DNA of 64,000 nucleotides, taken from NCBI RefSeq assembly GCF_963676685.1, contig NC_092347.1, positions 98,828,001 through 98,892,000 of the forward strand, in the 5' to 3' direction. Under the pieces are notes generated by a model. That model worked only from the letters and a program-made list of their open reading frames with translations. It made no database searches and was not told the origin of the DNA. A program made the translations under genes and the position numbers. Shown one piece after another: positions 5,570 to 18,913 of the stretch. Numbering within the stretch: position 1 is the first letter of the stretch; every line of letters starts with the position of its first letter. The DNA comes from Mytilus edulis. Taxonomy: Eukaryota.

Positions 5570-5980
5570 TATATATACTTAAAGGAGAAGGAAACCCAAA
5601 TTTTTTTTTTAGCTCAGTTGAAAGAATTATTGTTAATAATAAGGTTTACTGTTTAAAGTTATTCAAAATTATGCTCAGAAATGTCAAACCCGTTAGTTTA
5701 AATATAAAAATTTTAAATTTCCCGCCAATTACTGGAGATCGACATTTTGAGGAGCTCTTCTGTATTGGAGAGTACAGAAGTTGAAATTTGCCACGTCATC
5801 CCTACTGTTCCGGTCTTCTTCTTCTCTTCTTCTTCCAGTTAAGCGGCCGCAATCAACTGTCTGATTATTCTGCCACTGTGTGTTGCGCATGAAAGTCCAA
5901 AGAAAATTTAATATATTTACATTTTGTGAAAGTTAAAATCCTATATACAGGTGCTCATTAAAAACAAATGTTTAGGTCTA

Positions 5981-6780
5981 TTTTGTTAGCCGAGCCTTGA
6001 AGCATTCAAGACTCGGAGCGGTGGTAGTTGAAAGTGGTAAGGCATTCCATTCCCGTATAGATTTTGGATAGAATGACATTTTCCTTATATCTGTTCTGCA
6101 AAGAGGAACCTGGAAACATCCAGTCCTAGTTGTTCTTGATGCTCGGCTTGTTGGAATGAGCCTAGATGTTGCATCTATATTAACTAGGCAGTTAGTAATT
6201 TTGTACATCATGCACATCCTTGTTGTTGTTCTTCTCTCTTCTAGTTGTTGCCACTCGAGTTGTTTTATCATGGCATCTACTGATGATGTGTTACGGTATT
6301 TGTTGGTAACATACCTAGCCCCTCTGCGTTGTACCATCTCAATTTTTTTCTTGTTGTTTTGTTGATGGGGGTCCCAGACTGCGCTTGCATATTCTAGTGT
6401 TGGTCTGACTAATGACTTGTATGCATTTTCTTTTAGTTGTTTGTTACTGATGTTAAGATTTCTTTTTAAGAACCCAATAGTTTTATTTGCTTTTTGGCAG
6501 ATGTTATGTACATGGGTACTCCAATTTAAATCTGAGCTGATTGTAACTCCAAGATATTTTGCGTCTGATACTCTTTCCAGTACATGGCCATGAAGGATAT
6601 AATCATTTGTGATTGGCTTTCTTTTCTTGCTGATGGTCATGACATTGCATTTGTCTGCGTTGAACTTCATGAGCCATCGTTGTTCCCAGTCTGATAATTT
6701 GTTCAGATCCTCCTGCAGTGTTGTGGTATCTGCATCTGATGTTATTGTAAGATAAATGATTGTGTCGTCAGCAAACAACC
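5981..6780 (-). mobile_element. 5'-truncated LINE RT/C-terminal fragment inserted antisense inside the Kolobok element
   Basis: Open frame RLFADDT...KYLGVTI...YKSLVRPTLEYASAVWDP...SFYPKSIREWNALP...FKARL. It is flanked by the direct repeat GGTCTA (5975-5980 and 6781-6786). Confidence 0.9.
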
Positions 6781-6835
6781 GGTCTAACCAGAAGCAACCA
6801 TATTCATCAAACTTTTCTTTCAACAATACGATATT

Positions 6836-9800
6836 ATGCCGTCTTGTCAAGCTATCAATTGTGTAAATGAAAGAGGAAAGTGTGGGAAGAGCTTTTTTGA
6901 AATACCAGATCCGTTAAAATCTAGCGAGAAACGTAAACTCTGCAAACTTTGGATAGATCATTTGCGCAATGATAAACTGAAAATCGAAACTTTTGTGTGG
7001 AGTAAAGGCAGAGTTGTTTGTGAGGAACATTTTGAACAAGATTGTTTTGAAAGGAATCTGATGGCTGAATCCCTGGGGTTTAAATCTGGAAGACTCACAC
7101 TGAAGCCTGGAGCAGTTCCAACCTTAGTAAAACCTGGCCCTGGTGTAGCTGATCGTCAAAAGGAAAGGACTTCTACCAAAATATTTCAGGAGAAGAGACG
7201 GAAGGCACAGGTAATTATGAGAATTTACTTGTTTTTCTGTCAGTCTTGTTTCTTCACATGCTTATGGTCCTACAGATAAAATATAGCATTATAGGGGAAA
7301 GACTATAGTGCACACAGGACACATGAACACATATGTGGAGGATACAAAAAAGGGGGAGGCTGAGTACTGAATTTCTACACTCGGGATGTTGTACTTTAGG
7401 GGATATTTGTAAGCATATCACATAACTTTGTAACTGTACATATATATATATACACCAATTATGAATTATTTTTTATGACCCAATGATGTCACCTGAAAGT
7501 TAAAGAGGGGCGAAAGATACCAAAGGGACATTCAAACTCATAAGTAAAAATAAACTGACAAAGCCATGCCTAAAAAGGAAACAGACAAAGAGTACACTAA
7601 ACACAACATAGAATGAATAATTCATAATTCATAATTCATAAACGAATCCCACCAAAAAGTGGGGGTGATCTCGTGAAAGGGCAGGGGCGGATCCAGCCAT
7701 TTTAAAAAGAGGGTTCCTAACCCCAGACAAAGGGGCGGTTCCAACTATATGTCCCCATTCAAATGCATTGATCATCCTGAAAAAAGGGGGGTTCCAACCC
7801 CCGGACCCCCCCCCCTGGATCCGCCATCGAAGTTCACACTTAAAATTTTCATAAAATCCTGTGTCACACACAACACATTATTTTGCGTCTCTTTCAGGGG
7901 CGGATGCAGGAATTTTCGAAAGGGGGGTGCTAACCCAGGGCAAAGGGGTGGTGCGCACCCCCGGAACCCCCCCCCCCTGGATCCGCCACTGTCTTTGACG
8001 GACGGAGTGGAGCGGTTATAGACCTGCTTTCCCCGTTGGTGACACAGTTACAAAGATTTCTTAACCCTCTTGCTGCCACACGGACATATGTGTCCATCAC
8101 TGATAGCTTGCCACCCGATCACATATGTCCTTTTCAATGACAAAATCACTGGTTTTAATTTTTATGATTACAAAGCTGTTTCTGAAATAAACTTCCTCAT
8201 AAATGATATAAAGTAAAATTTGAATATGTAATGTAGCAATTTCTTAATTTGTGTACTTTTTTAAAACAAATCAAATTGTCTGAATTGTAATTTTAAAGAC
8301 GTCACATTATGCATTTTGAATTTTGAAAATGAAACAAAATACTGTGAACGTCCTAAACTACATGTATTGTGGCGTACGTAACGTTGTTTGAAATTTGAAT
8401 CTGGCAAAAAGAGGGTTAAACACAGAAAAATGTGATGCTGACTATATGTTTACATTCTTTGTTTATTTATGATTCGGTTAAAACTAGCTACAGGTTTCAC
8501 TGTAAAATGCAGTAAACACAACATGTTTTGGGGCTCACAATATCTACTCAATGCTATGTGAAGCATTGAAACACATTGTAAATCAGGTACAATGTATCTT
8601 GGTGAAAAAAAATAATTTGTGAAATACATGTGATGCATCTAATTAGCTTTTATTGATTTCTATCATGTTTTGTATGTTAAAAAAAGTTGTTTCATGTAAA
8701 AAATGTACTGTACATAAAGTCGTAAGTGTACACTGCATGAAGTGTTAAGTACAGGAACACTTTTTCTTTATTTTTGTAAAAAAAAAAAGCTTTTTGATTA
8801 TTTCAGCTCAGAAGTAGTGTAACTGCCTTTGTAAACACCAAGGAAAAAAGTTCCAACAAAAGGACATTGTCAGAAAGTACAGACAGTAAAGCAACAAAAC
8901 CAAAGAAGTTCAAAAGTTCAACTGCAGTTCATCCTCAACAGTCAGATGATATTTCATTTGAGGTAATTTGTGTATATTTTATTAATATTTTCATCGCGGC
9001 CTACTTATCGTCCAACTGGGGTTAGTATAGTCTGTTGAGTTTACTCGACTGACAATCGAACCCCTCGAGTTTTACCTTTTGAACCTACCCGAGTTAATTC
9101 GACATCAACCCTGGGTTGTGGTACAGTGGCGGATCCAGGGGGGGTTCCGGAGGTGCGCACCCCCCCTTTATTTTTGTCGATCAATGCATTTGTATCGGGA
9201 CATATGTTTTGCACCCCCCTTTGCCCTGGGTTAGCACCCCCCCCCCCCTTTCGAAAATTCCTGCATCCGCCCCTGTGGTAGGATTAGTAGAGTTTCAAAA
9301 GGGTGTCAAAAATAAAAATAAAGAAGATTATGCTACAATGACAGACTTTGTATTTAAATGCAGCATAAAAAACGGTTAGTAAAAGAAATTTATTTTTCAA
9401 CTGTATTTTGTCATTTATAGACATTTTTCATGTGTAAAGACTGTCAGTAATGACTTTGTTTAATAATATAAAAAAAACTAAATTTGGTTACTTCGTTTAG
9501 TTTTCTAAGAATGAAATGAAAATTTATTACGAAATGTCATATATACGACAACTAATGCAGTAATGGATAGGCTTTTCGTGAATTTATTACTACCGTACAT
9601 GAAATATGTTGCTAATTTAAATTAAACGCTTGATAAAAATCGAAAATCTACAGACCGGTTCACTGAGTTTCTGTGAAATTTAATGCAGGAACAATTTAAG
9701 AAGGGTAAATTCTAATTAGTTCCTGAGTTATGTTATAATTATATATGTACATAGTCGTTAATACAACGAAAATTATTATTTAGCGTCCATTTTTAGAGTT

Positions 9801-12800
9801 AACTCGATGAAAGTTTTCACTTCGATTCGGTAGAGGTACGCACATGCGCATTAACACTTTGCTACCTGAGTTGGGCGAATCAAAGTAGGCCCTGGACATC
9901 TAAATATATCAACCAAGAGCTCCTGTACATGTCTCCCTTCATGATAAAGGAGATTTATGTTCACAAACTGATTTCAATAATTGTAGAGTCACCTATATGA
10001 CTAAATAATTAAAATATAATATCGACTCAAAAACAACAGTATTTTTTGTGAGAGGAGGTTAATGAATTATCATAACTTCTTGTGGTAACATGAACATGTA
10101 GTCATATACATTTGTACTTGTATATATTTTCTGGGTCAAATATCATTTCTTTTAATCATGTTATATGGCATATATTTAATCATATATGACAGTATACATG
10201 TAACAGCAATGGTATTCTGTCTTGTCTCACAATGATTATGATTTGGGCCTATAATTGCTATAAGTACTGATAAATAAAAAAGACAATAAAATATTTGCTA
10301 CATTTATATGAGTAACATTGCATTATATGTAACTCTGTGAATTATGCCTTTGATACAACAAATCACAAACAGCAATTAATTCAAACCATTCAAATAGCCT
10401 AAGATTGTAGGGTAATATAGGTTTATAATATATATTAAATTTAAGGGTAAGGTAGCTTTAGTGATTAAATGTATCTACTGTAACTTCTTACAATGAAGAT
10501 ACATGTAATATATGACATATACATGTATTTTTTAACAGTTAAAAGTCTTCTTCAGGTAATCATGGCTAAGAAAATTTTAATCAGTACATAGTATAAATTA
10601 ATGTTTCGTGGTCTGCTGAAGCCTGTCTCTGGATGCTGGATTTCTCACGTTGAAGACCCATTGGTGGCATTGAGTTGTTATGTAAATTTTGGTCGGGTTG
10701 TTGTCTCTTTGACACATTCTCTGTTTCCATCCTTTATTCTATGTATGTCAATATTGCAATTTGGCCAAATATTAATATAATATGTATGTTTCCTATTACA
10801 TGCTGAAAATAAATTTTATTTTAAAAAACTTTTTTACATCGTCATAATCTGGGAAAATCCCATTTCCATTATTATCAAGATTCCTACCAGAATTATGCCA
10901 TAAAAAACCTGTAATTTAATCATTATAGTTCAGATTCCATAAAATCCAAGAATTAAAATATGATAAAATATTCAATACATAACTGAAAAACACTGATAAT
11001 TTACTCATGCACTATAGCCATTAGTGAATTCATGTGTTGTTTGGTCCCCCATTGCATATTTTTCTATCTGAATCCTTGCAAGGTTCTCATTTCTGTCAGT
11101 TTTCATATTGACCTCAAACTCATTTCATGGGTCAGTGAACAAGGTGAAGTTTTCTAGGTCAAGTCTATCTCAGATACTATAAGCAATAGGTCTTTTATAT
11201 TTGGCATGTTTGGTGTATGGAATGATTGTAAGGTGTACATGTCCAACTGACATGTGTCATCTGGCCTTGAACTTATTGTCATGGTTCATTGCAATTGGTC
11301 AATGCTTAATTTCTCTGATTTGTACTATTTGTGGTGTATGGAATATTGTATGGTGTGTATGTCTGTCTGGTAGGTGTCAGTTGAACTTTCATGGTTCATT
11401 GGTCAAATTTCAATTTCTTTATGAGGTCTGTTTCTGAGATACTTTTAGCAATAGGTTAACTAAATTTGGTGTATGGAATGATTGTATGGCCTACATATAA
11501 AAAAGAAGATATGGTATGATTGCCAATGAGACAACTCTCCACAAGAGACCAAAATGACACAGAAATTAACAACCATAGGTCACCGTAAAGCCTTCAACCA
11601 TGAGCACAGCTCATACCGCATAGTCAGCTATAAAAGGCCCTGAAATGACAATGTAAAACAATTCAAACAAGAAAACTAACGGCCTTATTTATATAAAAAA
11701 AGGAAAGAAAAACAAATATGTAACACATAAACAAACGACAACCACGTACATGTCTGTCTGAAAGAGTTTATCTCACATTGAACTCGTGTAAAAAGTGTGT
11801 CAACTCTAGTTTTTCTGTAGGGGCATTAAATGTATGCTGATTAAAAAAAATAACATGATTTTATTTTATTTATTGTAGAATGTTCCTGTTCATGCTGAAC
11901 AACATGATAAATTACCTTTATTGACCATACCAGAAATTCTTCCTTGTGGACATCCATGTGAAGTATGCAGAAAAATTAAAGGAGATGAAAATGTATTGGT
12001 TTTTGATCATAGCTACTCAAAATCTAAAGCAGAGGTAGATACGTCTTCAGAAATTCAACATGCCAGTTCTAGTGAAACACCTGCTAAAAAAGACAAACCA
12101 ATCTTCATTTCTTCTACTCCTTTAAAAACTGATTTTCAAAAATGTGCAGTAGAACCAATTTTTACTCCTGTACATATTTTGGATGAGTCTTTTGTAAGTT
12201 TGACACAAGAGGATGATCCAGAAGATGTTGATTACAGTCTAAGTGTTGACCAGGTAGAGTCCGATTCAGACAATTTTGAAAATGACATTTCAACATGCTA
12301 CACCGAAGAGCAGAAGTTAATTAAAGAAAACAAATTTATTGTATTTGAAAGTGCAATTGACACTTTAATCAACAAATTAAAATGCAACATTTGTGAATGT
12401 CCGGTTGATCCAGATGACATTGTTAAAGACTTGTCCAATGGAACTGTAATAACCATCACTGCCAATTGTACCAGTGGACACATAGTTGTAAAATGGAGTT
12501 CACAACCATTCCTTGGCAAGATGCCAGTTGGAAATTTATTAGTTAGTGCTGCAACATTATTCTGTGGTCAAACATACAGCCACATATCACAGTTTGCAGA
12601 ATTTTGTAACTTACAATATATTTCACACACCACCTACAACAAAATTCAAAGACAATATTTAATGCCTGTTGTTCAACACACGTGGTCCTTACTGCAAGAA
12701 GTAGAGTTAAAGAAAATCAAAGAACAAAATCGCCAGATACGGCTAGCAGGTGATGGAAGGTGTGATTCACCAGGTTTTAGTGCAAAGTATTGCACTTATT

Positions 12801-13774
12801 CTCTACTTGATATTGAAACCCAACGCATTATTACATTTGTTGTTGTCAAGGTTACTGAAACTGGGTCATCTTCAAAAATGGAAGTTGAAGGTTTTCGAAG
12901 ATGCATGACTCTTCTGCTTGACATGGGGTTCAGGATTGAGGTGTTAGCTACGGATCGGCATGTTCAGATAAGAAGCATCATGAAGAAGGAATTTCCGGAA
13001 GTGCAACATCAGTTTGATGTTTGGCACTTGTGCAAATCGATTAAAAAAAAGCTAACATTGAAGGCTAAAGGGAAAGGTTGCGAAGATTTAAACCATTGGA
13101 TGAAATCTATTTGTAATCATTTGTGGTGGTGTGCCAGTAATTGTGGTGGAGATAAGGACATTTTGGAAGAAAGCTGGATTTCCATTGTAAATCATACTGT
13201 TGATATACATTCTTTTGAGGGTAAATTCTTCAAGCAATGTGCTCACACACCAATTGAACCTGAAGTGTCTGACACTAAAAAATGGCTTGTAAAAGATTCA
13301 AAAGCCCATAAGGCATTAAAGGAAGTAGTGTTGGACAAGCGTTTGAGAAAGGACATTCGTCAGCTAAATGAATTTTGTCATACAGGAAATTTAGAAGTTT
13401 TTCACAGTCTGTTGCTGAAATATACACCAAAACGCCAGGAATTCGATAATGATCAAATGTGGACACGTACTGCTTTGGCGGTAATTGATCATAATCTTAA
13501 CCAAAATCGTGGTCAAAAGGTCAACAAAGATGGTGAAAAAGCATACAAATTGGTTTGTCCAAAGGCAACTGGGCAATGGGTGGCAAAGCCAGTGTTTAAT
13601 AACAAAAATTATCAGTGGGTATTTGCTATGATCGAAAACGTGTTGGTTCAAAAAGAAACAATGACACTGCCAGTAAAGGAAAGGGCACAGGAAGGAAATA
13701 TTGCTCCTTTGCCTGTTCCCTCAAAATCTGCATTGATTCAGAAACATTTTTCTCGATTTGAAAAATCCAGTTGA
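6836..13774 (+). CDS. Kolobok transposase (THAP zinc finger + DDE + H2CH), 3 exons: 6836-7210, 8807-8962, 11879-13774; 808 aa
   Basis: Exon 1 is a THAP domain (MPSCQAINC...FFEIP...W...VCEEHF...LKPGAVPT). Both GT..AG introns are phase 0 and join the exons in frame with no stops (125+52+631 codons). Exon 3 has LAGDGRCDSPG, LATDRH, QFDVWH, NHTVDIH...CAH and HTGNLEVFHS. Confidence 0.88.
7682..7829 (+). mobile_element. Small GC-rich MITE (CAGGGGCGGATCCAG...CTGGATCCGCC)
   Basis: Terminal inverted GGCGGATCCAG. Related to the elements at 7895 and 9124. The TSD is degraded. Confidence 0.7.
7895..7991 (+). mobile_element. 97-bp MITE with 5-bp TSD TCTTT
   Basis: TCTTT|CAGGGGCGGATGCAGG...CCTGGATCCGCCACTG|TCTTT. 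It is an internal-deletion version of the copy at 9124. Confidence 0.85.
8065..8415. mobile_element. piggyBac-like non-autonomous element
   Basis: TTAA|CCCTCTTGCTGCCA...TGGCAAAAAGAGGG|TTAA; 12 of 14 TIR positions match, with CCC/GGG termini. Confidence 0.78.
8995..9894. mobile_element. Non-autonomous TIR element in transposase intron 2
   Basis: Imperfect ~45-bp inverted ends: GGCCTACTTATCGTCCAACTGGGGTTAG versus reverse complement GGCCTACTTTGATTCGCCCAACTCAGGTAG. The TSD is not clear. Confidence 0.6.
9124..9275 (-). mobile_element. 152-bp MITE with 5-bp TSD TGGTA
   Basis: TGGTA|CAGTGGCGGATCCAGG...CCTGCATCCGCCCCTG|TGGTA. Same family as the copy at 7895, in opposite orientation. Confidence 0.85.
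11070..11800 (+). repeat. Degenerate copy of the 14567-15255 repeat family, with a nested AAAAGAAGATGTGGTATGATTGCC-type repeat (~11498-11746)
   Basis: Shares TTTGGTGTATGGAA and TTTCATGG(G/T)TCA motifs with 14567-15255. The nested piece matches the reverse complement of ~52010-52255. Confidence 0.65.
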
Positions 13775-14566
13775 ATATTTTTCTTGATATAAATATGAAA
13801 CAACCATTTTACTGGGGGTATTTTTTTTGTATCATGCAAGCATCTTTTTTCCCAGCACTGTACATTTGTACAAACATGATAAATTTGTCATTCAGTTCAT
13901 ACATGCAGCATGGTATGAAATCATATAATGTTCTGGTGAGGGTTTTTTTTTTTGGAATGATTGATTTAATTTTTGGTGTTTAATGTCACTTTCAACAATG
14001 AATAATGAATATTTCAGTTTTATTATGAATATAAGGATTAACTTGACCTCGAGTTTCATACCAGAGGGTTTGGTTAAAGTAATTTGATAATAGATATATA
14101 CTGTTCATGTACATGATGTATGTTAATGTGATTACAATGATCATTATATACATGTTTTTCTTTAAAAAAATAAATTTATGCCTTCCCAAATGACATACAT
14201 ACATTTTGTACTTACGAATTTCCATATTTTCTATTTCATTTTGGCTTTATCAAATACTTGCATATAATTTAAGCAGAACATGATTTGCAGTACAGGATGC
14301 AACCCTCTGGCGCACCTTGAAAAGTCGTAAGGTTGTAAGTCCCTGGCGTGGATGTAATATGCTCGTAAACTTGGCCTGCTGCAAATCATATCTTGCATAT
14401 AGTTTGGTTGTTAGGTGAAGGGGGGGGGAGGAGTTTGATTGTATGTATGTTTTTTGGTGAATTATATCATTAGTATATTCAGTTGTTTTCTTCAATCTCT
14501 ACACAGCTTAAAGGATAACTACATTTTGTTTATGTAATGATTATGATGATTGTTTGGTGTACATAG

Positions 14567-15255
14567 TGATCCGGCGGCGGCATTAGCTAACTTCTTAAAA
14601 GCTTTATATTTTAGAAGGCGGAAGACTTCATACTTTGTATATAGATGCCTCATGTTACGAACTTTCTGTCAGTCACATGTCCAATGTCCTTGACCTCATT
14701 TTCATGGTTCAGTGACTACTTGAAAAAAAAGTTAAGATTTTTTGTAATGTTAAATTCTCTCTTATTATAAGTAATAGGATAACTATATTTGGTATGTGCG
14801 TACCTTGCAAGGTCCTCATGCCTGTCAGACAGTTTTCACTGGACCTCGACCTCATCAATGCTCATTTCATGGATCAGTGAACAAGGTTAAGTTTTGGTGG
14901 TCAAGTCCATATTTCAGATACTGTAAGCAGTAGGTCTAGTATATTCGGTGTATGGAAGGACTGTGAGGTGTACATGTCCAACTGGCAGGTGTCATCTGAC
15001 CTTGACCTCATTTTCATGGTTCAGTGGTTATAGTTAAGTTTTTGTGTTTTGGTCTTTTTTTCTAATACTATATGCAATAGGTCAACTATATTTGGTGTAT
15101 GGAAATATTTTATGATCTATATGTCAGTCATGCAGGTTTTATTTGACCTTGACCTCATTGTCATTGCTCAGAGTAATAAAGCTTTATATTTAGGACTCAA
15201 CATAATATCAATGATAAGTAAAGAAGGCGAGACATTTCAGCGTGTGCACTCTTGT
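14567..15255 (+). repeat. Dispersed repeat with internal tandem subunits (TGACCTTGACCTCATTTTCATGG), probably a non-autonomous Helentron-like element
   Basis: About four diverged internal repeats between a GATCCGGCGGCGGC start and an AGCGTGTGCACTCTTGT end. It lies between the two Kolobok genes. The classification is inference. Confidence 0.55.
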
Positions 15256-15515
15256 ATGAATAGAGACATTGGTTTTAGACCACTAAAAGTAAAAAAACAC
15301 CTATGAACTACACCAACAAAAGACTACCACTAAACAACAGGCTCCGGACAGGTGCATATATAAATGCAGTAGTTTTTAATAATTATTCAAAGGCAACAGT
15401 TTATACAAGTTTATATAATTAACAATATATTATTAGCTTCATACAAAACTATCACATTCATGTATAATTTTTGTGTTTCTTTGCAAATCCTTTGTCATTA
15501 TGATTTTAAAACATT

Positions 15516-17049
15516 TCAACAAAACAGTTCTCTCACATCTATAGCAGCTTGAAATCCTGTATAATCATTGTTGTTCTCTGGGAAGGAATCTCTAATGTCT
15601 TTGACAACACAAGAAGGAATTACCACCCTTCTTCCTTTTCCAAGTTTTTCTCCTTTAAGCATCCAACAAATGAATTGTCTGTAAGCAACAAGACGGGATT
15701 GTCTGTAATAAAATATACAAATGAAAATGAAAGCATCAAATATATGATAGATTTTGGAAAAAATGGATTTATCCAAATTTCAACAGAACTGACAATAATG
15801 CATGTAGTTTAATTTATTTCACATGGTCACCAAAGATGAGAAAAGATATATATAGTAACCACTTTACTCCATCTGTCATTCTATCTGTCCAAAAGACATT
15901 GGGCATTAATTATGAAAAAGTCTCCCAACATTGAGCATTTCACGACTAGGCAAACAGCAGTCCTCAAAATAAAACATTGAAAACAAGACTGCAACCAGAA
16001 ACCACTTAACTCGGGGAAAGGCAGGCTGATTCTGCTCAAGAGGTGGTGCTTGATATATGTCTTATATATTAGTACAAATTTGTTGATTTCAGGAAGTCAT
16101 ATTCAAAGAAGAATAGAAAGGGATTGTGGTTATGACATTCAAAAATACATTTTATTAATTTCTGTGTCATTTTGGTCTCTTGTGGAGAGTTGTCTCATGG
16201 CAGTCATACAGCATCTTTTTTATATAGTATCATTCCACTTAAAGACACTCGAAAAATCGGAGCAAATATTATATTTTCTTTTCAATAGAATGAAAGTTAT
16301 GCTGACATTAATAATAGTCACATTCGGTGTATACAGTTCCAAGTTCAGTTGACCCACTCTGACTCATGGTTCCTGTTAAAGTTTGCATTTGTTGGTGAAA
16401 ACTTTGAAAAAAAAAAAAAAAAATAGATTTTTTTGTAATTCACTTTTTTTTTGTCTCATAGTGAGAGAACAATTTCAATTTATAGTAGGCAGTGTTCAAA
16501 CTCATTATTAATCGACGTGTACTTAATGGGAAATGACAATATTAAAATTTTTGAAGGACCACCTCACCCTACACCCCCCCCCCCCCAATATTTTTTAAAA
16601 TAAATTGTCTCTGTGTCTATTATTTGTGCAGACAACCAGATATAAGTTAGTTTGAAAGGAAACCTTTTTATTTAATTCTGGTTAATAAAACTTTTAAAAT
16701 GTCCAAAAATTCACCTGTTGCTCAATTCTTCCGGCGCTCGGCCTTGCTGTCCCTTGTACATCATCATCTGAATGTAAGCCAGTGCTAATACATCGGAATT
16801 TAAAATTAAGGTGTCATAACTATGGTGCATGGTAATGCAGTTGTGGTCTTCCAAGTTCGGTAGCACCAAATCTGATACCCTACAACAAACATTTTCTTCA
16901 AGGGACGGCATTTCCTGACAGTTCCCACACTCGCACCATTCATCCAATGTCTGAACTACAGCTTCAGAAGATGCTAATGCAGCTCTATTTCGATCTTCAA
17001 GTTCTTGAACAGTGAGCTCAGGTTCGAAGTTGTAAGCAACAAGACCCAT
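15516..17049 (-). CDS. KolX-like protein (P2X7 C-terminal ballast/nanor-like Cys-rich domain), 2 exons: 17049-16715 and 15702-15516; 173 aa
   Basis: A phase-2 intron (AACAG|gtga...ttacag|ACAA) joins WCECGNC...ENVCC...CITMH to RLVAYRQFICW...LGKGRRVVIPSCVVKDIRDSFP...YTGF, the motif series of the P2X7 ballast domain. It is convergent with the transposase, as in Kolobok elements. Confidence 0.87.
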
Positions 17050-18913
17050 CTGATTTTGGATATTTCCGCGGTACGTGTGTAAATAGAATTAGTTTTGCAA
17101 AGTTTCAGATGCTGGAACAGGTAAACCGGAACCGTAGGAGTGACGTCAGGGCTAAAACAATAATGGCTGCCTACATGGAGGCGGGAATTTCAAAATTGAT
17201 AATTGTAAAATATTGATTTATTTCATAACGGTACACTTTTTTAACACAAACGTTGTTAAAAATATATTTATATAATAATTTTCTATTAATTTATCCAAAT
17301 TTTTTTTTTTGGTTTCCTTCTCCTTTAATAAATATACCATTCTATACATGCATGCTCATACATATATTTTTGTATTATATTGCTATAAATGTTAAAGAAG
17401 ACTTCATAAATCTGTTTGACTTGTGTCTTATCCAATTTGTACTTAAACAAATGAAATATGTTCAAACTAAAACCGCTCATGTGTCAGAAATCAAGACTAC
17501 GATACACTGTTTTTTCTCACTTTTTGTGCGCTGCAGATTAAATCCAAATAGGACATGTCAACAATAACATTATCATATGAAACATACAATTCAATGGTTT
17601 GCATCGTTATGTTTTTGTTGGTTTGTTGTTTTGTACATATTGAGAAAAGACACATTTAGCTTCGGAGCCGTATTAACAGGCCTAGGGGATAAAATCTAAT
17701 ATTGGTTCTTCGGAGCCGTATTAACAGGCCTAGAGGGAGCCGTATTAACAGGCCTAGGGGATCAAATCTAATATTGGTTCTAAATAGATAAAAGATTAAT
17801 TCAGTGAAAAAAAACGGTATTCATTTAGAGAAACTTTTATGACCTAGGATGAAGTTTCTCGTTCAAATATTTTGACTTGATGTTTTAACAACTCTATTAT
17901 TAATGTATTTTTTTTCCATTGTTCGTTGTATTTATCGACGTTTGTTTCTAACATGATGTTTTGTAATCATAACTAACTAATATATTTGTTTTAAATGACT
18001 CACTGAAAAAGAGCGTTATGAACTCATGAGACTAAATTCAACATAAATTAAATTAAAAACATACATCCATTAGGAAAAAGCAACATATCTAGATCATGTG
18101 TCATTTCTTAAATGTGTTATTTTTGCAAATTTTTAACTAAGAGGGTTAAGGGGAATGACTGAGTTTTACTTCAGATTAGTTCAACAAACATCGAGTCTTG
18201 TGTAGACGAAACGCGCGTCTAGCGTAAATACAAAATTTAACTCTGGTATCTATGAGTTTATCTATATATTTATATTTATCTCAAGTTTAAAAAAAAAAGA
18301 TCTTCTATTTCGAGTAAAACCTTTCGAATCGAACATCAACTGTCGAAACAATCAAAACAATCCTAGCAAACTCTCATTTTATATTAAAATAGCATTTTCT
18401 CTCTAAAACACAATAATACAACTTATGTTTTAACAGTTATTGATTTATATTTGTTGTATACCAATCATGTTATTCTTTTCAATTATCTTACTTTCGTTAA
18501 TACAATTATTTCTAAGAAACACAAATGAATAAAATTACAAAAAAGAGAAATTTATCCTCTACAAAAATGCCTTTATTAATATATTTATTTGATGATGGGT
18601 TTTCTGAAATATAAAATGAATAATTCCACACAACGTGCATGGATCTAAATCGTTTATTTAAGAATTCAAAAAATCTCTGTAAAGTGAAATGTTTTGGCTT
18701 TAATTTTTAGGTAACTTTGGATTAAGATCATCATTTATTTACGCAAATTTTATGTTTTGTCCGTTATTGTTTTAGGCAGACCTAGATAAGCTTTCAGGAA
18801 CAACCAAAAAAACAATAAAAAAGCAATTTAGTAGGTTAGAATTAAATCTGAGGGAATTTAAGGCGATTGGTTTAAAGCATATTAACAAAATATCGTTAAA
18901 AAGTGCAAAAATT

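What the first reader, a model, noticed from the sequence alone, without database searches (positions are those of the whole stretch)
15516..17049. Transposon-borne stand-alone P2X7 'ballast'-like Zn/guanine-nucleotide-binding protein
Seen: two ORFs that look unrelated in the ORF track splice into one protein with WCxCxxC, CC, CITxH, AYRxFxxW, LGxGxRxxIPSCxVxxIRxxFP and YxGF. Known: these motifs are those of the vertebrate P2X7 cytoplasmic ballast (dinuclear Zn site and GDP/GTP pocket) and of Kolobok KolX proteins. I know of no established role for them in transposition. Inference: a guanine-nucleotide-sensing accessory factor could regulate the transposase, giving a compact two-component system.
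Basis: partly seen in the sequence, partly recalled or inferred. Interest (0 to 1): 0.78.

Follow-up and report, generated by a model that had tools for sequence, protein, structure and literature searches.

The report
Mussel Kolobok transposon's KolX ballast gene
This is a small two-exon gene carried inside a Kolobok DNA transposon of a mussel, whose zinc-cysteine protein has the same fold as the tail of the vertebrate P2X7 receptor; that link was published in 2022, so the find is real but ordinary.

Summary
On the minus strand, exon 1 (17049-16715) and exon 2 (15702-15516) each hit Pfam P2RX7_C above its cut-off. They join in phase across a 1012-nt GT..AG intron, and one contig of a public run carries exactly that joint.

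The gene lies inside an 11,742-bp Kolobok element (5583-17324) with TTAA duplications, 14-bp inverted ends, 5'-AG..CT-3' termini and a THAP + DDE transposase on the other strand.

A model of a 97%-identical public mussel protein matches only P2X7 receptors in the PDB (Z 10.7-11.7; next best 2.4).

All seven zinc cysteines are kept, but only 2 of the 5 rat GDP contacts are. "Guanine-nucleotide-binding" is therefore weakly supported, and no regulatory role was tested.

Ballast genes and Kolobok transposases are linked, convergent and co-diverging across several families in this genome, under purifying selection.

Kojima & Bao 2022 (PMC9587614) already state that KolX of Kol0 Kolobok elements has the ballast fold. 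This is a new member of a known kind. The scan noted similar Kolobok-plus-ballast elements elsewhere in this genome.

The parts
5579..5582 (.). Left TTAA target-site duplication
   Evidence: Exact 18-nt match TTAA+AGGAGAAGGAAACC at 5579-5596 (+) and 17311-17328 (-); expected by chance 0.06. Flanks read.
5583..17324 (+). Whole Kolobok (Kol0-type) element, 11,742 bp, termini 5'-AG..CT-3'
   Evidence: Homology with the other genomic copies ends at 17328 in 4 of 4 copies and at about 5576 in the full copy on C3 at 87 Mb. That copy has TTAA on both sides with different flanks.
5583..5596 (+). Left terminal inverted repeat (14 bp perfect)
   Evidence: Alignment of the two ends.
5817..6778 (-). Nested insertion found only in the window copy; it carries a reverse-transcriptase fragment (ORF 5978-6850, -)
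   Evidence: Missing from the C3 87 Mb copy. ORF hits RVT_1, E 3.3e-6, 27.4 bits, below the 29.6-bit cut-off.
6836..7279 (+). THAP zinc-finger ORF, probably the first coding exon of the transposase (exon limits not determined)
   Evidence: PF05485 THAP, E 2.3e-13, 51.1 bits.
11921..13774 (+). DDE transposase core ORF (617 aa)
   Evidence: PF20700 Mutator-like transposase, E 9.8e-12, 44.9 bits. A DVWH (DxxH) motif is read in the translation. Residues 134-560 of this ORF are 100% identical to the C3 87 Mb copy over 427 aa.
15516..15702 (-). KolX exon 2 (61 codons + stop): AYRQF..W helix, LGKGRRVVIPSC, IRDSFP, YTGF
   Evidence: PF20478, E 5.4e-10. Aligns to P2X7 546-593. Joint seen.
15703..16714 (-). 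KolX intron, 1012 nt, GT..AG
   Evidence: Sequence. Contig joint 15702|16715 in run X1. A public M. galloprovincialis protein, P0002, reads ..ELSNR|QSRLVAY.. across the same junction.
16152..16226 (.). High-copy short repeat nested in the intron; not part of the gene
   Evidence: At least 35 genomic matches at 86-93% identity. An inverted partner lies at 11526-11572. RNA depth here is 150-450x against 1-4x on the exons.
16715..17049 (-). KolX exon 1 (111 codons + 2 nt): N-terminal AYNFEP, WCECGNC, VCCR, CITMH
   Evidence: PF20478, E 3.4e-10. Aligns to P2X7 463-529.
17311..17324 (-). Right terminal inverted repeat
17325..17328 (.). Right TTAA target-site duplication

Best explanation
SHOWN. Window 15516-17049 (-) is the two-exon KolX gene of a Kol0-type Kolobok DNA transposon (5583-17324) in a mussel genome. 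I infer the species to be Mytilus edulis. The element has TTAA duplications and 14-bp inverted ends. A THAP + DDE transposase sits on the + strand and KolX lies downstream on the opposite strand, so the two genes converge. KolX is a roughly 173-182-aa soluble protein with the P2X7 cytoplasmic-ballast fold and all seven cysteines of the two-zinc cluster.

INFERRED.
- KolX is an element-encoded accessory factor that the transposon lineage needs. It stays linked to the transposase, diverges in step with it across families, and is under purifying selection.
- It most likely works as a zinc-stabilised helical module that uses a conserved arginine site. That site comprises the equivalents of P2X7 R546 and R578 plus a family-specific third arginine in the LGKxxRxVIPSC motif. 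It would hold a phosphate-bearing ligand or partner: a nucleotide, a nucleic acid or a phosphoprotein.
- It would act together with the transposase, perhaps as an oligomer, as the isolated P2X7 ballast is trimeric.
- Guanine specificity is not implied by the sequence.

I put about 0.9 on the identity and about 0.35 on this mechanism.
For: Identity of the element:
- Each exon hits PF20478 above the cut-off.
- The exact 18-nt end match TTAA+AGGAGAAGGAAACC occurs at both ends, against 0.06 expected by chance.
- 4 of 4 other copies stop at 17328, and the full copy on C3 has TTAA on both sides with different flanks.
- THAP hit, E 2.3e-13. Transposase hit PF20700, E 9.8e-12.
- The Kolobok criteria (TTAA, 5'-RR..YY-3', a C/DxxH transposase, KolX as the second protein of Kol0) come from PMC9587614 section 3.

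Fold:
- AlphaFold2 model of P0002 (M. galloprovincialis; 97% identical over exon 1, identical over exon 2) built on an 86-sequence alignment: pLDDT 87.3, pTM 0.75.
- Foldseek: the 14 best PDB hits are all P2X7 (E 4.7e-5 to 1.3e-3); the next hit has E 1.3.
- VIA-align: Z 10.7-11.7, rmsd 2.7-3.2 A over 112-116 residues; the next hit has Z 2.4.

Conservation in 86 homologues:
- The seven cysteines are kept in 84-86 of 86.
- The R546 equivalent is kept in 86 of 86, the R578 equivalent in 83 of 86, and the extra arginine in 84 of 86.

Linkage and selection:
- 26 of 89 ballast loci in this genome have a related transposase within 10 kb, against about 0.1% expected by chance.
- 6 of 6 fetched linked loci, plus the window, have the convergent layout.
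- KolX exon 2 identity falls with transposase identity: 72/78, 55/43, about 47/about 35 %.
- Exon 1 against a diverged family: codon-position identity 0.73/0.81/0.37; dN 0.28 with synonymous sites saturated.

Expression and oligomer state:
- Low-level strand-specific RNA reads and one spliced contig.
- The soluble P2X7 ballast is trimeric and binds GDP (abstract of PMC9574498).
Against: - No experiment or computation here touches function. No complex with the transposase could be predicted.
- I had no access to the model's coordinates, so I did not show that the three arginines lie together.
- 63 of 89 ballast loci have no transposase match within 10 kb. These may be decayed or non-autonomous elements, domesticated genes, or misses, since the search scores only the best candidates. 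The protein may therefore also have element-independent roles.
- The fold test used a public homologue that carries Y at the first zinc cysteine, not the window's own joined product.
- The spliced form rests on one contig of a run whose RNA nature is a guess. That contig also runs on past the element's end into unlike sequence, so it comes from another copy or is a read-through or assembly product.
- The window copy has lost the usual start codon.
- The transposase's best Pfam match is named 'Mutator-like'. I had no Kolobok reference proteins to compare it with.
Confidence: 0.85

Rival explanations
1. One reading: KolX is a GDP/GTP sensor that couples transposase activity to the cell's guanine-nucleotide state. 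It would use the same pocket as the P2X7 ballast.
For: - The fold is the same as the GDP-binding ballast.
- The two arginines that contact GDP in rat P2X7 (R546, R578) are kept in 86 and 83 of 86 homologues.
- Y550 and W556 equivalents are kept in 85 and 76 of 86.
- Rump et al. modelled a sponge ballast protein and judged that the region may still bind GDP (PMC7016195 sections 11 and 15).
Against: - Three of the five rat contacts are lost in the window protein: H547 to L, R574 to V, K583 to E, the last a charge reversal.
- Family-wide, the R574 column shows no R among the residues counted (V 73, I 6, L 4, T 2, Y 1 of 86). The K583 column is S, E or D in 70 of 86. H547 is H in 16 of 86.
- No binding data exist for any invertebrate or transposon ballast protein in the papers I could search.
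Confidence: 0.2
2. KolX binds no small ligand. It is a zinc-knit protein-protein module that oligomerises and scaffolds the transposase complex or recruits a host factor. The conserved N-terminal PYxFEP peptide would serve as a docking motif.
For: - The strictly conserved features are the zinc cysteines (84-86 of 86) and hydrophobic core positions.
- An N-terminal motif lies outside the ballast-homologous part: P in 81 of 86, and E or D in 73 of 86.
- The isolated P2X7 ballast forms trimers and binds calmodulin (abstract of PMC9574498).
Against: Three surface-type arginines are nearly invariant (86, 84 and 83 of 86). That is more typical of an anion-binding site than of a pure scaffold. No interaction data exist.
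Confidence: 0.25
3. KolX acts on the host rather than on transposition chemistry. For example, it could damp host silencing, or time expression to a cell state. Its spread into host genes (P2X7, Nanor) would reflect a signalling role.
For: - Ballast domains were domesticated at least twice in vertebrates, according to PMC9587614 section 16.
- 63 of 89 ballast loci in this genome have no transposase match nearby.
Against: The convergent linkage with the transposase persists across families that have diverged to 31-38% transposase identity. That fits a factor used by the element itself. There is no direct evidence either way.
Confidence: 0.15
4. The gene is an ordinary host gene that happens to sit beside a transposase, not part of a mobile element.
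For: Public annotation calls the homologues 'P2X purinoceptor 7-like' with no mention of a transposon.
Against: - The gene lies inside the inverted ends and TTAA duplications.
- It is repeated together with the element at 97-99% identity on other chromosomes, in different flanks.
- The same layout recurs in 6 of 6 other linked loci examined.
Confidence: 0.02

Closest known systems
KolX protein of Kol0-lineage Kolobok transposons (type family Kolobok-1_XT; Kojima & Bao 2022, PMC9587614)
   Same: - Second protein of a TTAA-inserting Kolobok element with 5'-RR..YY-3' termini.
- Sequence similarity to P2X7 residues 476-595.
- Seven conserved cysteines.
- No known function.
   Different: - The paper lists the Kol0 lineage in vertebrates, annelids, cnidarians and sponges (section 16); this element is in a bivalve mollusc.
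- I could not compare directly with Repbase KolX sequences or the paper's supplementary alignment (supplements are closed), so membership rests on layout and domain, not on a tree.
Cytoplasmic ballast domain of vertebrate P2X7 (e.g. PDB 6u9v, 8trb, 9e3o)
   Same: - Same fold: Z 10.7-11.7, 27-30% identity over 112-116 residues.
- The same three cysteine clusters.
- R546, Y550, W556, P570, C572, R578, F581, P582, Y588 and G590 equivalents are kept.
   Different: - Stand-alone soluble protein with no channel or membrane part.
- H547, R574 and K583 are replaced.
- There is a 2-residue insertion, and the adjacent position (aligned to rat F566) holds a nearly invariant arginine, LGKxxR, that P2X7 lacks.
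- There is an extra N-terminal PYxFEP motif.
Stand-alone ZCD/ballast proteins of invertebrates and zebrafish Nanor (Rump et al. 2020, PMC7016195; PANTHER PTHR36981 as named there)
   Same: - Short proteins with the domain at the C-terminus.
- All zinc cysteines kept.
- Only R546 and R578 of the GDP contacts kept outside deuterostomes (sections 11 and 15). I find the same pattern.
   Different: - Rump et al. treated them as host genes present in fewer than 10 copies per species. This genome has at least 89 loci, 26 of them next to a Kolobok-type transposase.
[quoted passage not shown]
   Same: - Same superfamily and same host group.
- Same layout: a small accessory gene downstream of the transposase on the opposite strand (PMC9587614 section 9).
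   Different: - The accessory protein is a ballast-fold protein, not a nuclease.
- The ends are short inverted repeats, not long terminal direct repeats.

Membership tests
Kolobok superfamily of DNA transposons | [quoted passage not shown] | tested here: met
   TTAA lies on both sides of the window copy and of the C3 87 Mb copy. Of 4 right ends read, 3 have TTAA and 1 has TAAA. Criterion from PMC9587614 section 3.
Kolobok superfamily of DNA transposons | Termini 5'-RR ... YY-3' (this separates it from piggyBac) | tested here: met
   The element starts AGGAG.. and ends ..CTCCT.
Kolobok superfamily of DNA transposons | [quoted passage not shown] | tested here: inconclusive
   Pfam gives PF20700 'Mutator-like transposase', E 9.8e-12. 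A DVWH motif is visible in the ORF. I did not assign the catalytic residues by alignment, and no Kolobok reference set (Repbase) was on hand.
Kol0 lineage of Kolobok | A second protein, KolX, similar to the P2X7 C-terminus | tested here: met
   Two-exon gene inside the element; PF20478 hit on each exon.
P2RX7_C / cytoplasmic ballast domain (Pfam PF20478) | Profile match above the curated cut-off | tested here: met
   40.6 and 39.9 bits against a 23.5-bit cut-off, each exon searched alone. 86 of 86 aligned homologues also match.
P2RX7_C / cytoplasmic ballast domain (Pfam PF20478) | Three cysteine clusters of the two-zinc site: WCxCxxC; CC..CIT; PSC | tested here: met
   WCECGNC, VCCR...CIT and IPSC give 7 of 7 cysteines. 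Consensus clusters from PMC7016195 section 9. The CC-to-CIT spacer is longer than in P2X7.
P2RX7_C / cytoplasmic ballast domain (Pfam PF20478) | Three-dimensional match to the solved ballast | tested here: met
   Met for P0002, a public protein 97% identical over exon 1 and identical over exon 2: Foldseek E 4.7e-5, VIA Z up to 11.7, and only P2X7 entries score. The window's own joined product was not folded because joining was left out by rule.
P2RX7_C / cytoplasmic ballast domain (Pfam PF20478) | GDP-contact residues of rat P2X7: R546, H547, R574, R578, K583 | tested here: not met
   2 of 5 are kept: R, L, V, R, E. The pattern is the same across 86 homologues. This lowers the claim 'binds GDP like P2X7', not the fold membership.
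P2RX7_C / cytoplasmic ballast domain (Pfam PF20478) | Actual zinc and guanine-nucleotide binding | not testable with these tools
   Needs purified protein.

The most novel reading that the evidence does not exclude
The ancestral transposon form of the ballast fold carries a three-arginine phosphate site of its own: the R546 and R578 equivalents plus the LGKxxR arginine that P2X7 lacks. This site would bind something other than GDP, for instance transposon-end DNA, an RNA or another phosphorylated ligand. That would make KolX an obligatory cofactor of Kolobok transposition. On this reading the GDP pocket of P2X7 is a vertebrate re-tooling of that site.
Probability: 0.25. Interest if true: 0.55.

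Novelty: new member of a known kind. Interest (0 to 1): 0.22.

Why it matters
The P2X7 ballast domain is a drug-target-adjacent module whose function is still unclear. Its likely ancestor is this transposon protein, whose role has not been studied in any paper I could search.

The mussel genome offers several young, divergent Kolobok families in which both reading frames are open and the accessory gene is transcribed. That gives material for asking what a ballast fold does when it is not tied to an ion channel.

The present finding adds no new principle. It re-derives a published link and extends it to a bivalve. It also shows that the guanine-nucleotide part of the analogy is weak.

Tried and rejected
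1. I first took the 47-nt, 98% inverted repeat 11526-11572 / 16152-16198 for possible element ends, which would have cut the gene in two. I rejected this. The arm is a high-copy short repeat with at least 35 other genomic matches, and the true ends are at 5583 and 17324.

2. The bacterial promoter/terminator scan is meaningless for an animal gene and showed no enrichment (12 found against 9.9 expected). I made no use of it.

3. McCarthy et al. 2019 (PMC7053488) is not held. I took the list of GDP contacts from Rump et al. 2020 section 9 instead. The individual zinc ligands in the solved structure were not checked residue by residue.

4. NG86 dS could not be computed because synonymous sites are saturated. 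I report codon-position identities instead. Within the diverged family (L008 against L009) there are too few changes to say anything: exon 1 ratio 1.66 from 8 changes, exon 2 ratio 0.27 from 6 changes.

6. The model's coordinates could not be read, so clustering of the arginines was not tested.

7. I did not search the transposase against the large protein databases, so its Kolobok placement rests on ends, duplications and layout.

8. Supplementary files of PMC9587614 (the KolX alignment, Figure S6, Data S6) are closed. They may already contain mollusc KolX sequences.
Full report
WHAT IS THERE

On the minus strand of the window there are two open frames, 16711-17049 (112 aa) and 15516-15776 (86 aa). 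Searched separately, each hits Pfam PF20478 (P2RX7_C, the intracellular ballast domain of P2X7) well above the 23.5-bit cut-off. The first scores 40.6 bits, E 3.4e-10, on profile positions 60-126. The second scores 39.9 bits, E 5.4e-10, on positions 144-192.

Against PDB sequences the best hits of each exon are P2X7 chains at colinear positions, 463-529 and 546-593. Those E-values are only marginal, 0.014-0.03.

THE SPLICE

Read from the sequence, the donor is AACAG|GTGAAT, with 16715 the last exon base. The acceptor is TTATTACAG|ACAATCC, with 15702 the first exon base. The frames fit with a split codon AG|A. The intron is 1012 nt.

Exon 1 holds 111 codons plus 2 nt, and exon 2 holds 1 nt plus 61 codons and the stop.

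In read laying, one 885-letter contig of run X1 carries the joint 15702|16715, 'skips 1012', ends CT..AC on the + strand. There are caveats:
- X1 is only guessed to be RNA.
- The same run also has an unspliced contig across the acceptor.
- The spliced contig continues past the element's end into unlike sequence. It therefore comes from another copy, or is a read-through or assembly product.

Raw RNA-seq runs X21 and X22 (about 6% of each run read) cover both exons at 1-4x. The first mate lies on the + strand only, which in most stranded libraries means a minus-strand RNA. No junction read reached the listing threshold. Run X24 gave nothing on the exons.

A public M. galloprovincialis protein (P0002, 182 aa, named 'P2X purinoceptor 7-like') reads ..ELSNR|QSRLVAY.. 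across the same junction.

All searches of the window's product were made exon by exon, and the joined step is left out.

THE ELEMENT

The gene region recurs at 99% and 97% identity on another chromosome, plus two partial copies. Local BLAST of the window against those copies shows that 4 of 4 stop at window 17328. The full copy also stops at about 5576.

The 18-mer TTAA+AGGAGAAGGAAACC occurs exactly twice in the window, at 5579-5596 (+) and 17311-17328 (-), against 0.06 expected by chance. The ends align as 14-bp perfect inverted repeats.

The full copy on C3 has TTAA on both sides in different flanking DNA. Of four right ends read, three are followed by TTAA and one by TAAA.

The element is therefore 5583-17324 (11,742 bp), with termini 5'-AG..CT-3'. 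Those are the Kolobok hallmarks given in PMC9587614 section 3: TTAA duplications and 5'-RR..YY-3'.

On the + strand it carries:
- a THAP ORF (6836-7279; PF05485, E 2.3e-13);
- a 617-aa transposase ORF (11921-13774; PF20700 'Mutator-like transposase', E 9.8e-12), with a DVWH motif.

I had no Kolobok reference transposases, so that one criterion stays inconclusive.

The window copy carries a private 962-bp insertion with a reverse-transcriptase fragment. It also carries a private 10-bp deletion that removes the usual KolX start codon, which is present in 3 of 3 other copies.

The 47-nt inverted repeat that put one arm in the KolX intron is a high-copy short repeat, not an element end.

THE ORGANISM

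P0003, named Mytilus edulis by its source, sits on a contig of 107,021,180 bases. That is the length of contig C3 of this genome. I infer that the window comes from M. edulis.

THE FOLD

I searched 1.84 billion representative proteins with P0002. There were 1353 clusters at E up to 0.001 and 316 at E up to 1e-10, mostly proteins of 165-230 aa.

From the 150 listed I chose 85 long matches and aligned them with P0002, giving 86 rows. All 86 hit PF20478.

AlphaFold2 on this alignment gave pLDDT 87.3 and pTM 0.75.
- Foldseek against the PDB: the 14 best hits are all P2X7 receptors (E 4.7e-5 to 1.3e-3, TM by query 0.46-0.52); the next hit has E 1.3.
- VIA-align on Foldseek's list: Z 10.7-11.7, rmsd 2.7-3.2 A, 112-116 residues, 27-30% identity; model residues 40-175 lie on P2X7 about 423-595; the next best hit has Z 2.4.

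Two caveats apply. The model is of a 97%-identical public homologue, not of the window's own product. That homologue carries Y at the first zinc cysteine, where the window has C.

ZINC SITE AND NUCLEOTIDE POCKET

The three cysteine clusters defined by Rump et al. (PMC7016195 section 9) are all present, 7 of 7 cysteines. Across the 86 homologues these columns hold C in 84-86 rows.

The rat GDP contacts named there are R546, H547, R574, R578 and K583. In the alignment the window protein has R, L, V, R and E at those places, so 2 of 5 are kept.

Family-wide:

| Rat P2X7 residue | Count among 86 homologues |
|---|---|
| R546 | R in 86 |
| R578 | R in 83 |
| H547 | H in 16 |
| R574 | V in 73; no R among the residues counted |
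| K583 | S, E or D in 70 |

This agrees with Rump et al., who wrote that outside deuterostomes only R546 and R578 are conserved (sections 11 and 15).

A further arginine, in LGKxxRxVIPSC, is kept in 84 of 86. A 2-residue insertion relative to P2X7 lies just before it, and the arginine itself aligns to rat F566.

An N-terminal PYxFEP motif lies outside the ballast-homologous part: P in 81 of 86.

So a conserved basic site exists, but nothing in the sequence says it is specific for guanine nucleotides.

IS KOLX A LASTING PART OF THE ELEMENT?

In this genome PF20478 gives 108 matched pieces, which I merged into 89 loci. The window's transposase core gives 98 pieces, merged into 64 loci. Both counts are lower bounds, because only the best candidates are scored.

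- 26 of 89 ballast loci have a transposase match within 10 kb, and 25 of 64 the other way round, against about 0.1% expected by chance.
- 63 of 89 ballast loci have none.
- I fetched 6 linked loci from different families.
- All 6, like the window, have the transposase and KolX converging.
- KolX exon 2 identity to the window falls in step with transposase identity: 72% at 71-78%, 55% at 43%, and 44-48% at 31-38%.
- One family has no intron at the window's splice site.
- Between the window's exon 1 and a diverged family, identity is 0.73, 0.81 and 0.37 at codon positions 1, 2 and 3. dN is 0.28 and synonymous sites are saturated. That is purifying selection on the protein.

HOW IT LIKELY WORKS

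Shown:
- a zinc-cysteine ballast-fold protein;
- encoded inside the element from its own end;
- kept by selection;
- co-diverging with the transposase.

Inferred:
- it serves the element's own spread as an accessory factor;
- it most likely acts through the conserved arginine site, binding a phosphate-bearing ligand or partner;
- it is perhaps an oligomer, as the soluble P2X7 ballast is trimeric (abstract of PMC9574498).

COMPARISON WITH WHAT IS KNOWN

Kojima & Bao 2022 (PMC9587614; passages and sections 3, 9, 12 and 16 read) state three things. Kol0 Kolobok elements encode a transposase and KolX. KolX resembles P2X7 residues 476-595, with seven conserved cysteines. The P2X7 tail and Nanor probably derive from KolX. 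They give no function for KolX.

In the held library only that paper joins ballast, P2X7 and transposon, and it is the only biology paper among the 20 listed (of 77 found) for the term KolX; the other listed hits are materials-science papers.

They list the Kol0 lineage in vertebrates, annelids, cnidarians and sponges. A bivalve member is a modest extension. Their supplementary alignments, which I could not open, may already include molluscs.

VERDICT

The element is a new member of a known kind, and interest is low.

Earlier notes of this scan describe the same element on this window, and similar Kolobok-plus-ballast elements elsewhere in this genome. One of those places, on C4 near 5.56 Mb, is among my 26 linked loci and was one of the 6 fetched.

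Noticed in passing
window 16152-16226 and 11526-11572: A short high-copy repeat. It has at least 35 genomic matches at 86-93% identity and occurs here as an inverted pair, one arm in the KolX intron and the other just upstream of the transposase core ORF. RNA-seq depth on it is 150-450x on both strands, against 1-4x on the neighbouring exons, and the reads run on into unlike sequence. It is probably the conserved core of an abundant, transcribed SINE- or MITE-like family.
   Followed up: partly
window 17057-17066: The window copy lacks 10 bp that in 3 of 3 other copies hold the usual KolX start codon (MENG[N/S]IQNQ before MGLV). The frame stays open from the next ATG at 17049.
   Followed up: yes
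window 5817-6778 (ORF 5978-6850, -): A reverse-transcriptase fragment is inserted near the left end of this copy only. It is absent from the 97.6%-identical copy on C3. Its ORF ends 15 nt after the THAP ORF's ATG.
   Followed up: partly
window 7682-7992 and 9123-9275: A cluster of G+C-rich inverted repeats with arms up to 33 nt at 100% (CAGGGGCGGAT..., GGGGGGTGCTAACCC...), about 1.2-1.5 kb apart, inside the presumed transposase intron. It looks like a nested foldback or MITE-type insertion. It is also present in the C3 copy, because the alignment runs through it.
   Followed up: no
L020:3218-3715 (G000:C5:88.518 Mb): In a Kolobok family whose transposase is 43% identical to the window's, the KolX gene is a single exon with no intron at the window's splice site. 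The intron is therefore lineage-specific.
   Followed up: partly
window 17141-17148: A perfect TGACGTCA (CRE-like palindrome) lies about 95 nt upstream of the KolX start, within the 275 bp between the gene and the right end. A first-stage note (s1-842097) covers promoter modules at the element's ends.
   Followed up: no
alignment A2, P0002 residues 14-19: A conserved N-terminal PYxFEP motif in stand-alone ballast proteins (P in 81 of 86; E or D in 73 of 86). It lies outside the part that matches P2X7 or the Pfam profile.
   Followed up: partly
L003 (G000:C3:29.37 Mb): This 5'-truncated copy differs at the end of KolX exon 1, where the peptide match stops at residue 104 of 111. Its right end is followed by TAAA, not TTAA. 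The public annotation (P0003, 167 aa) uses a different splice there.
   Followed up: partly
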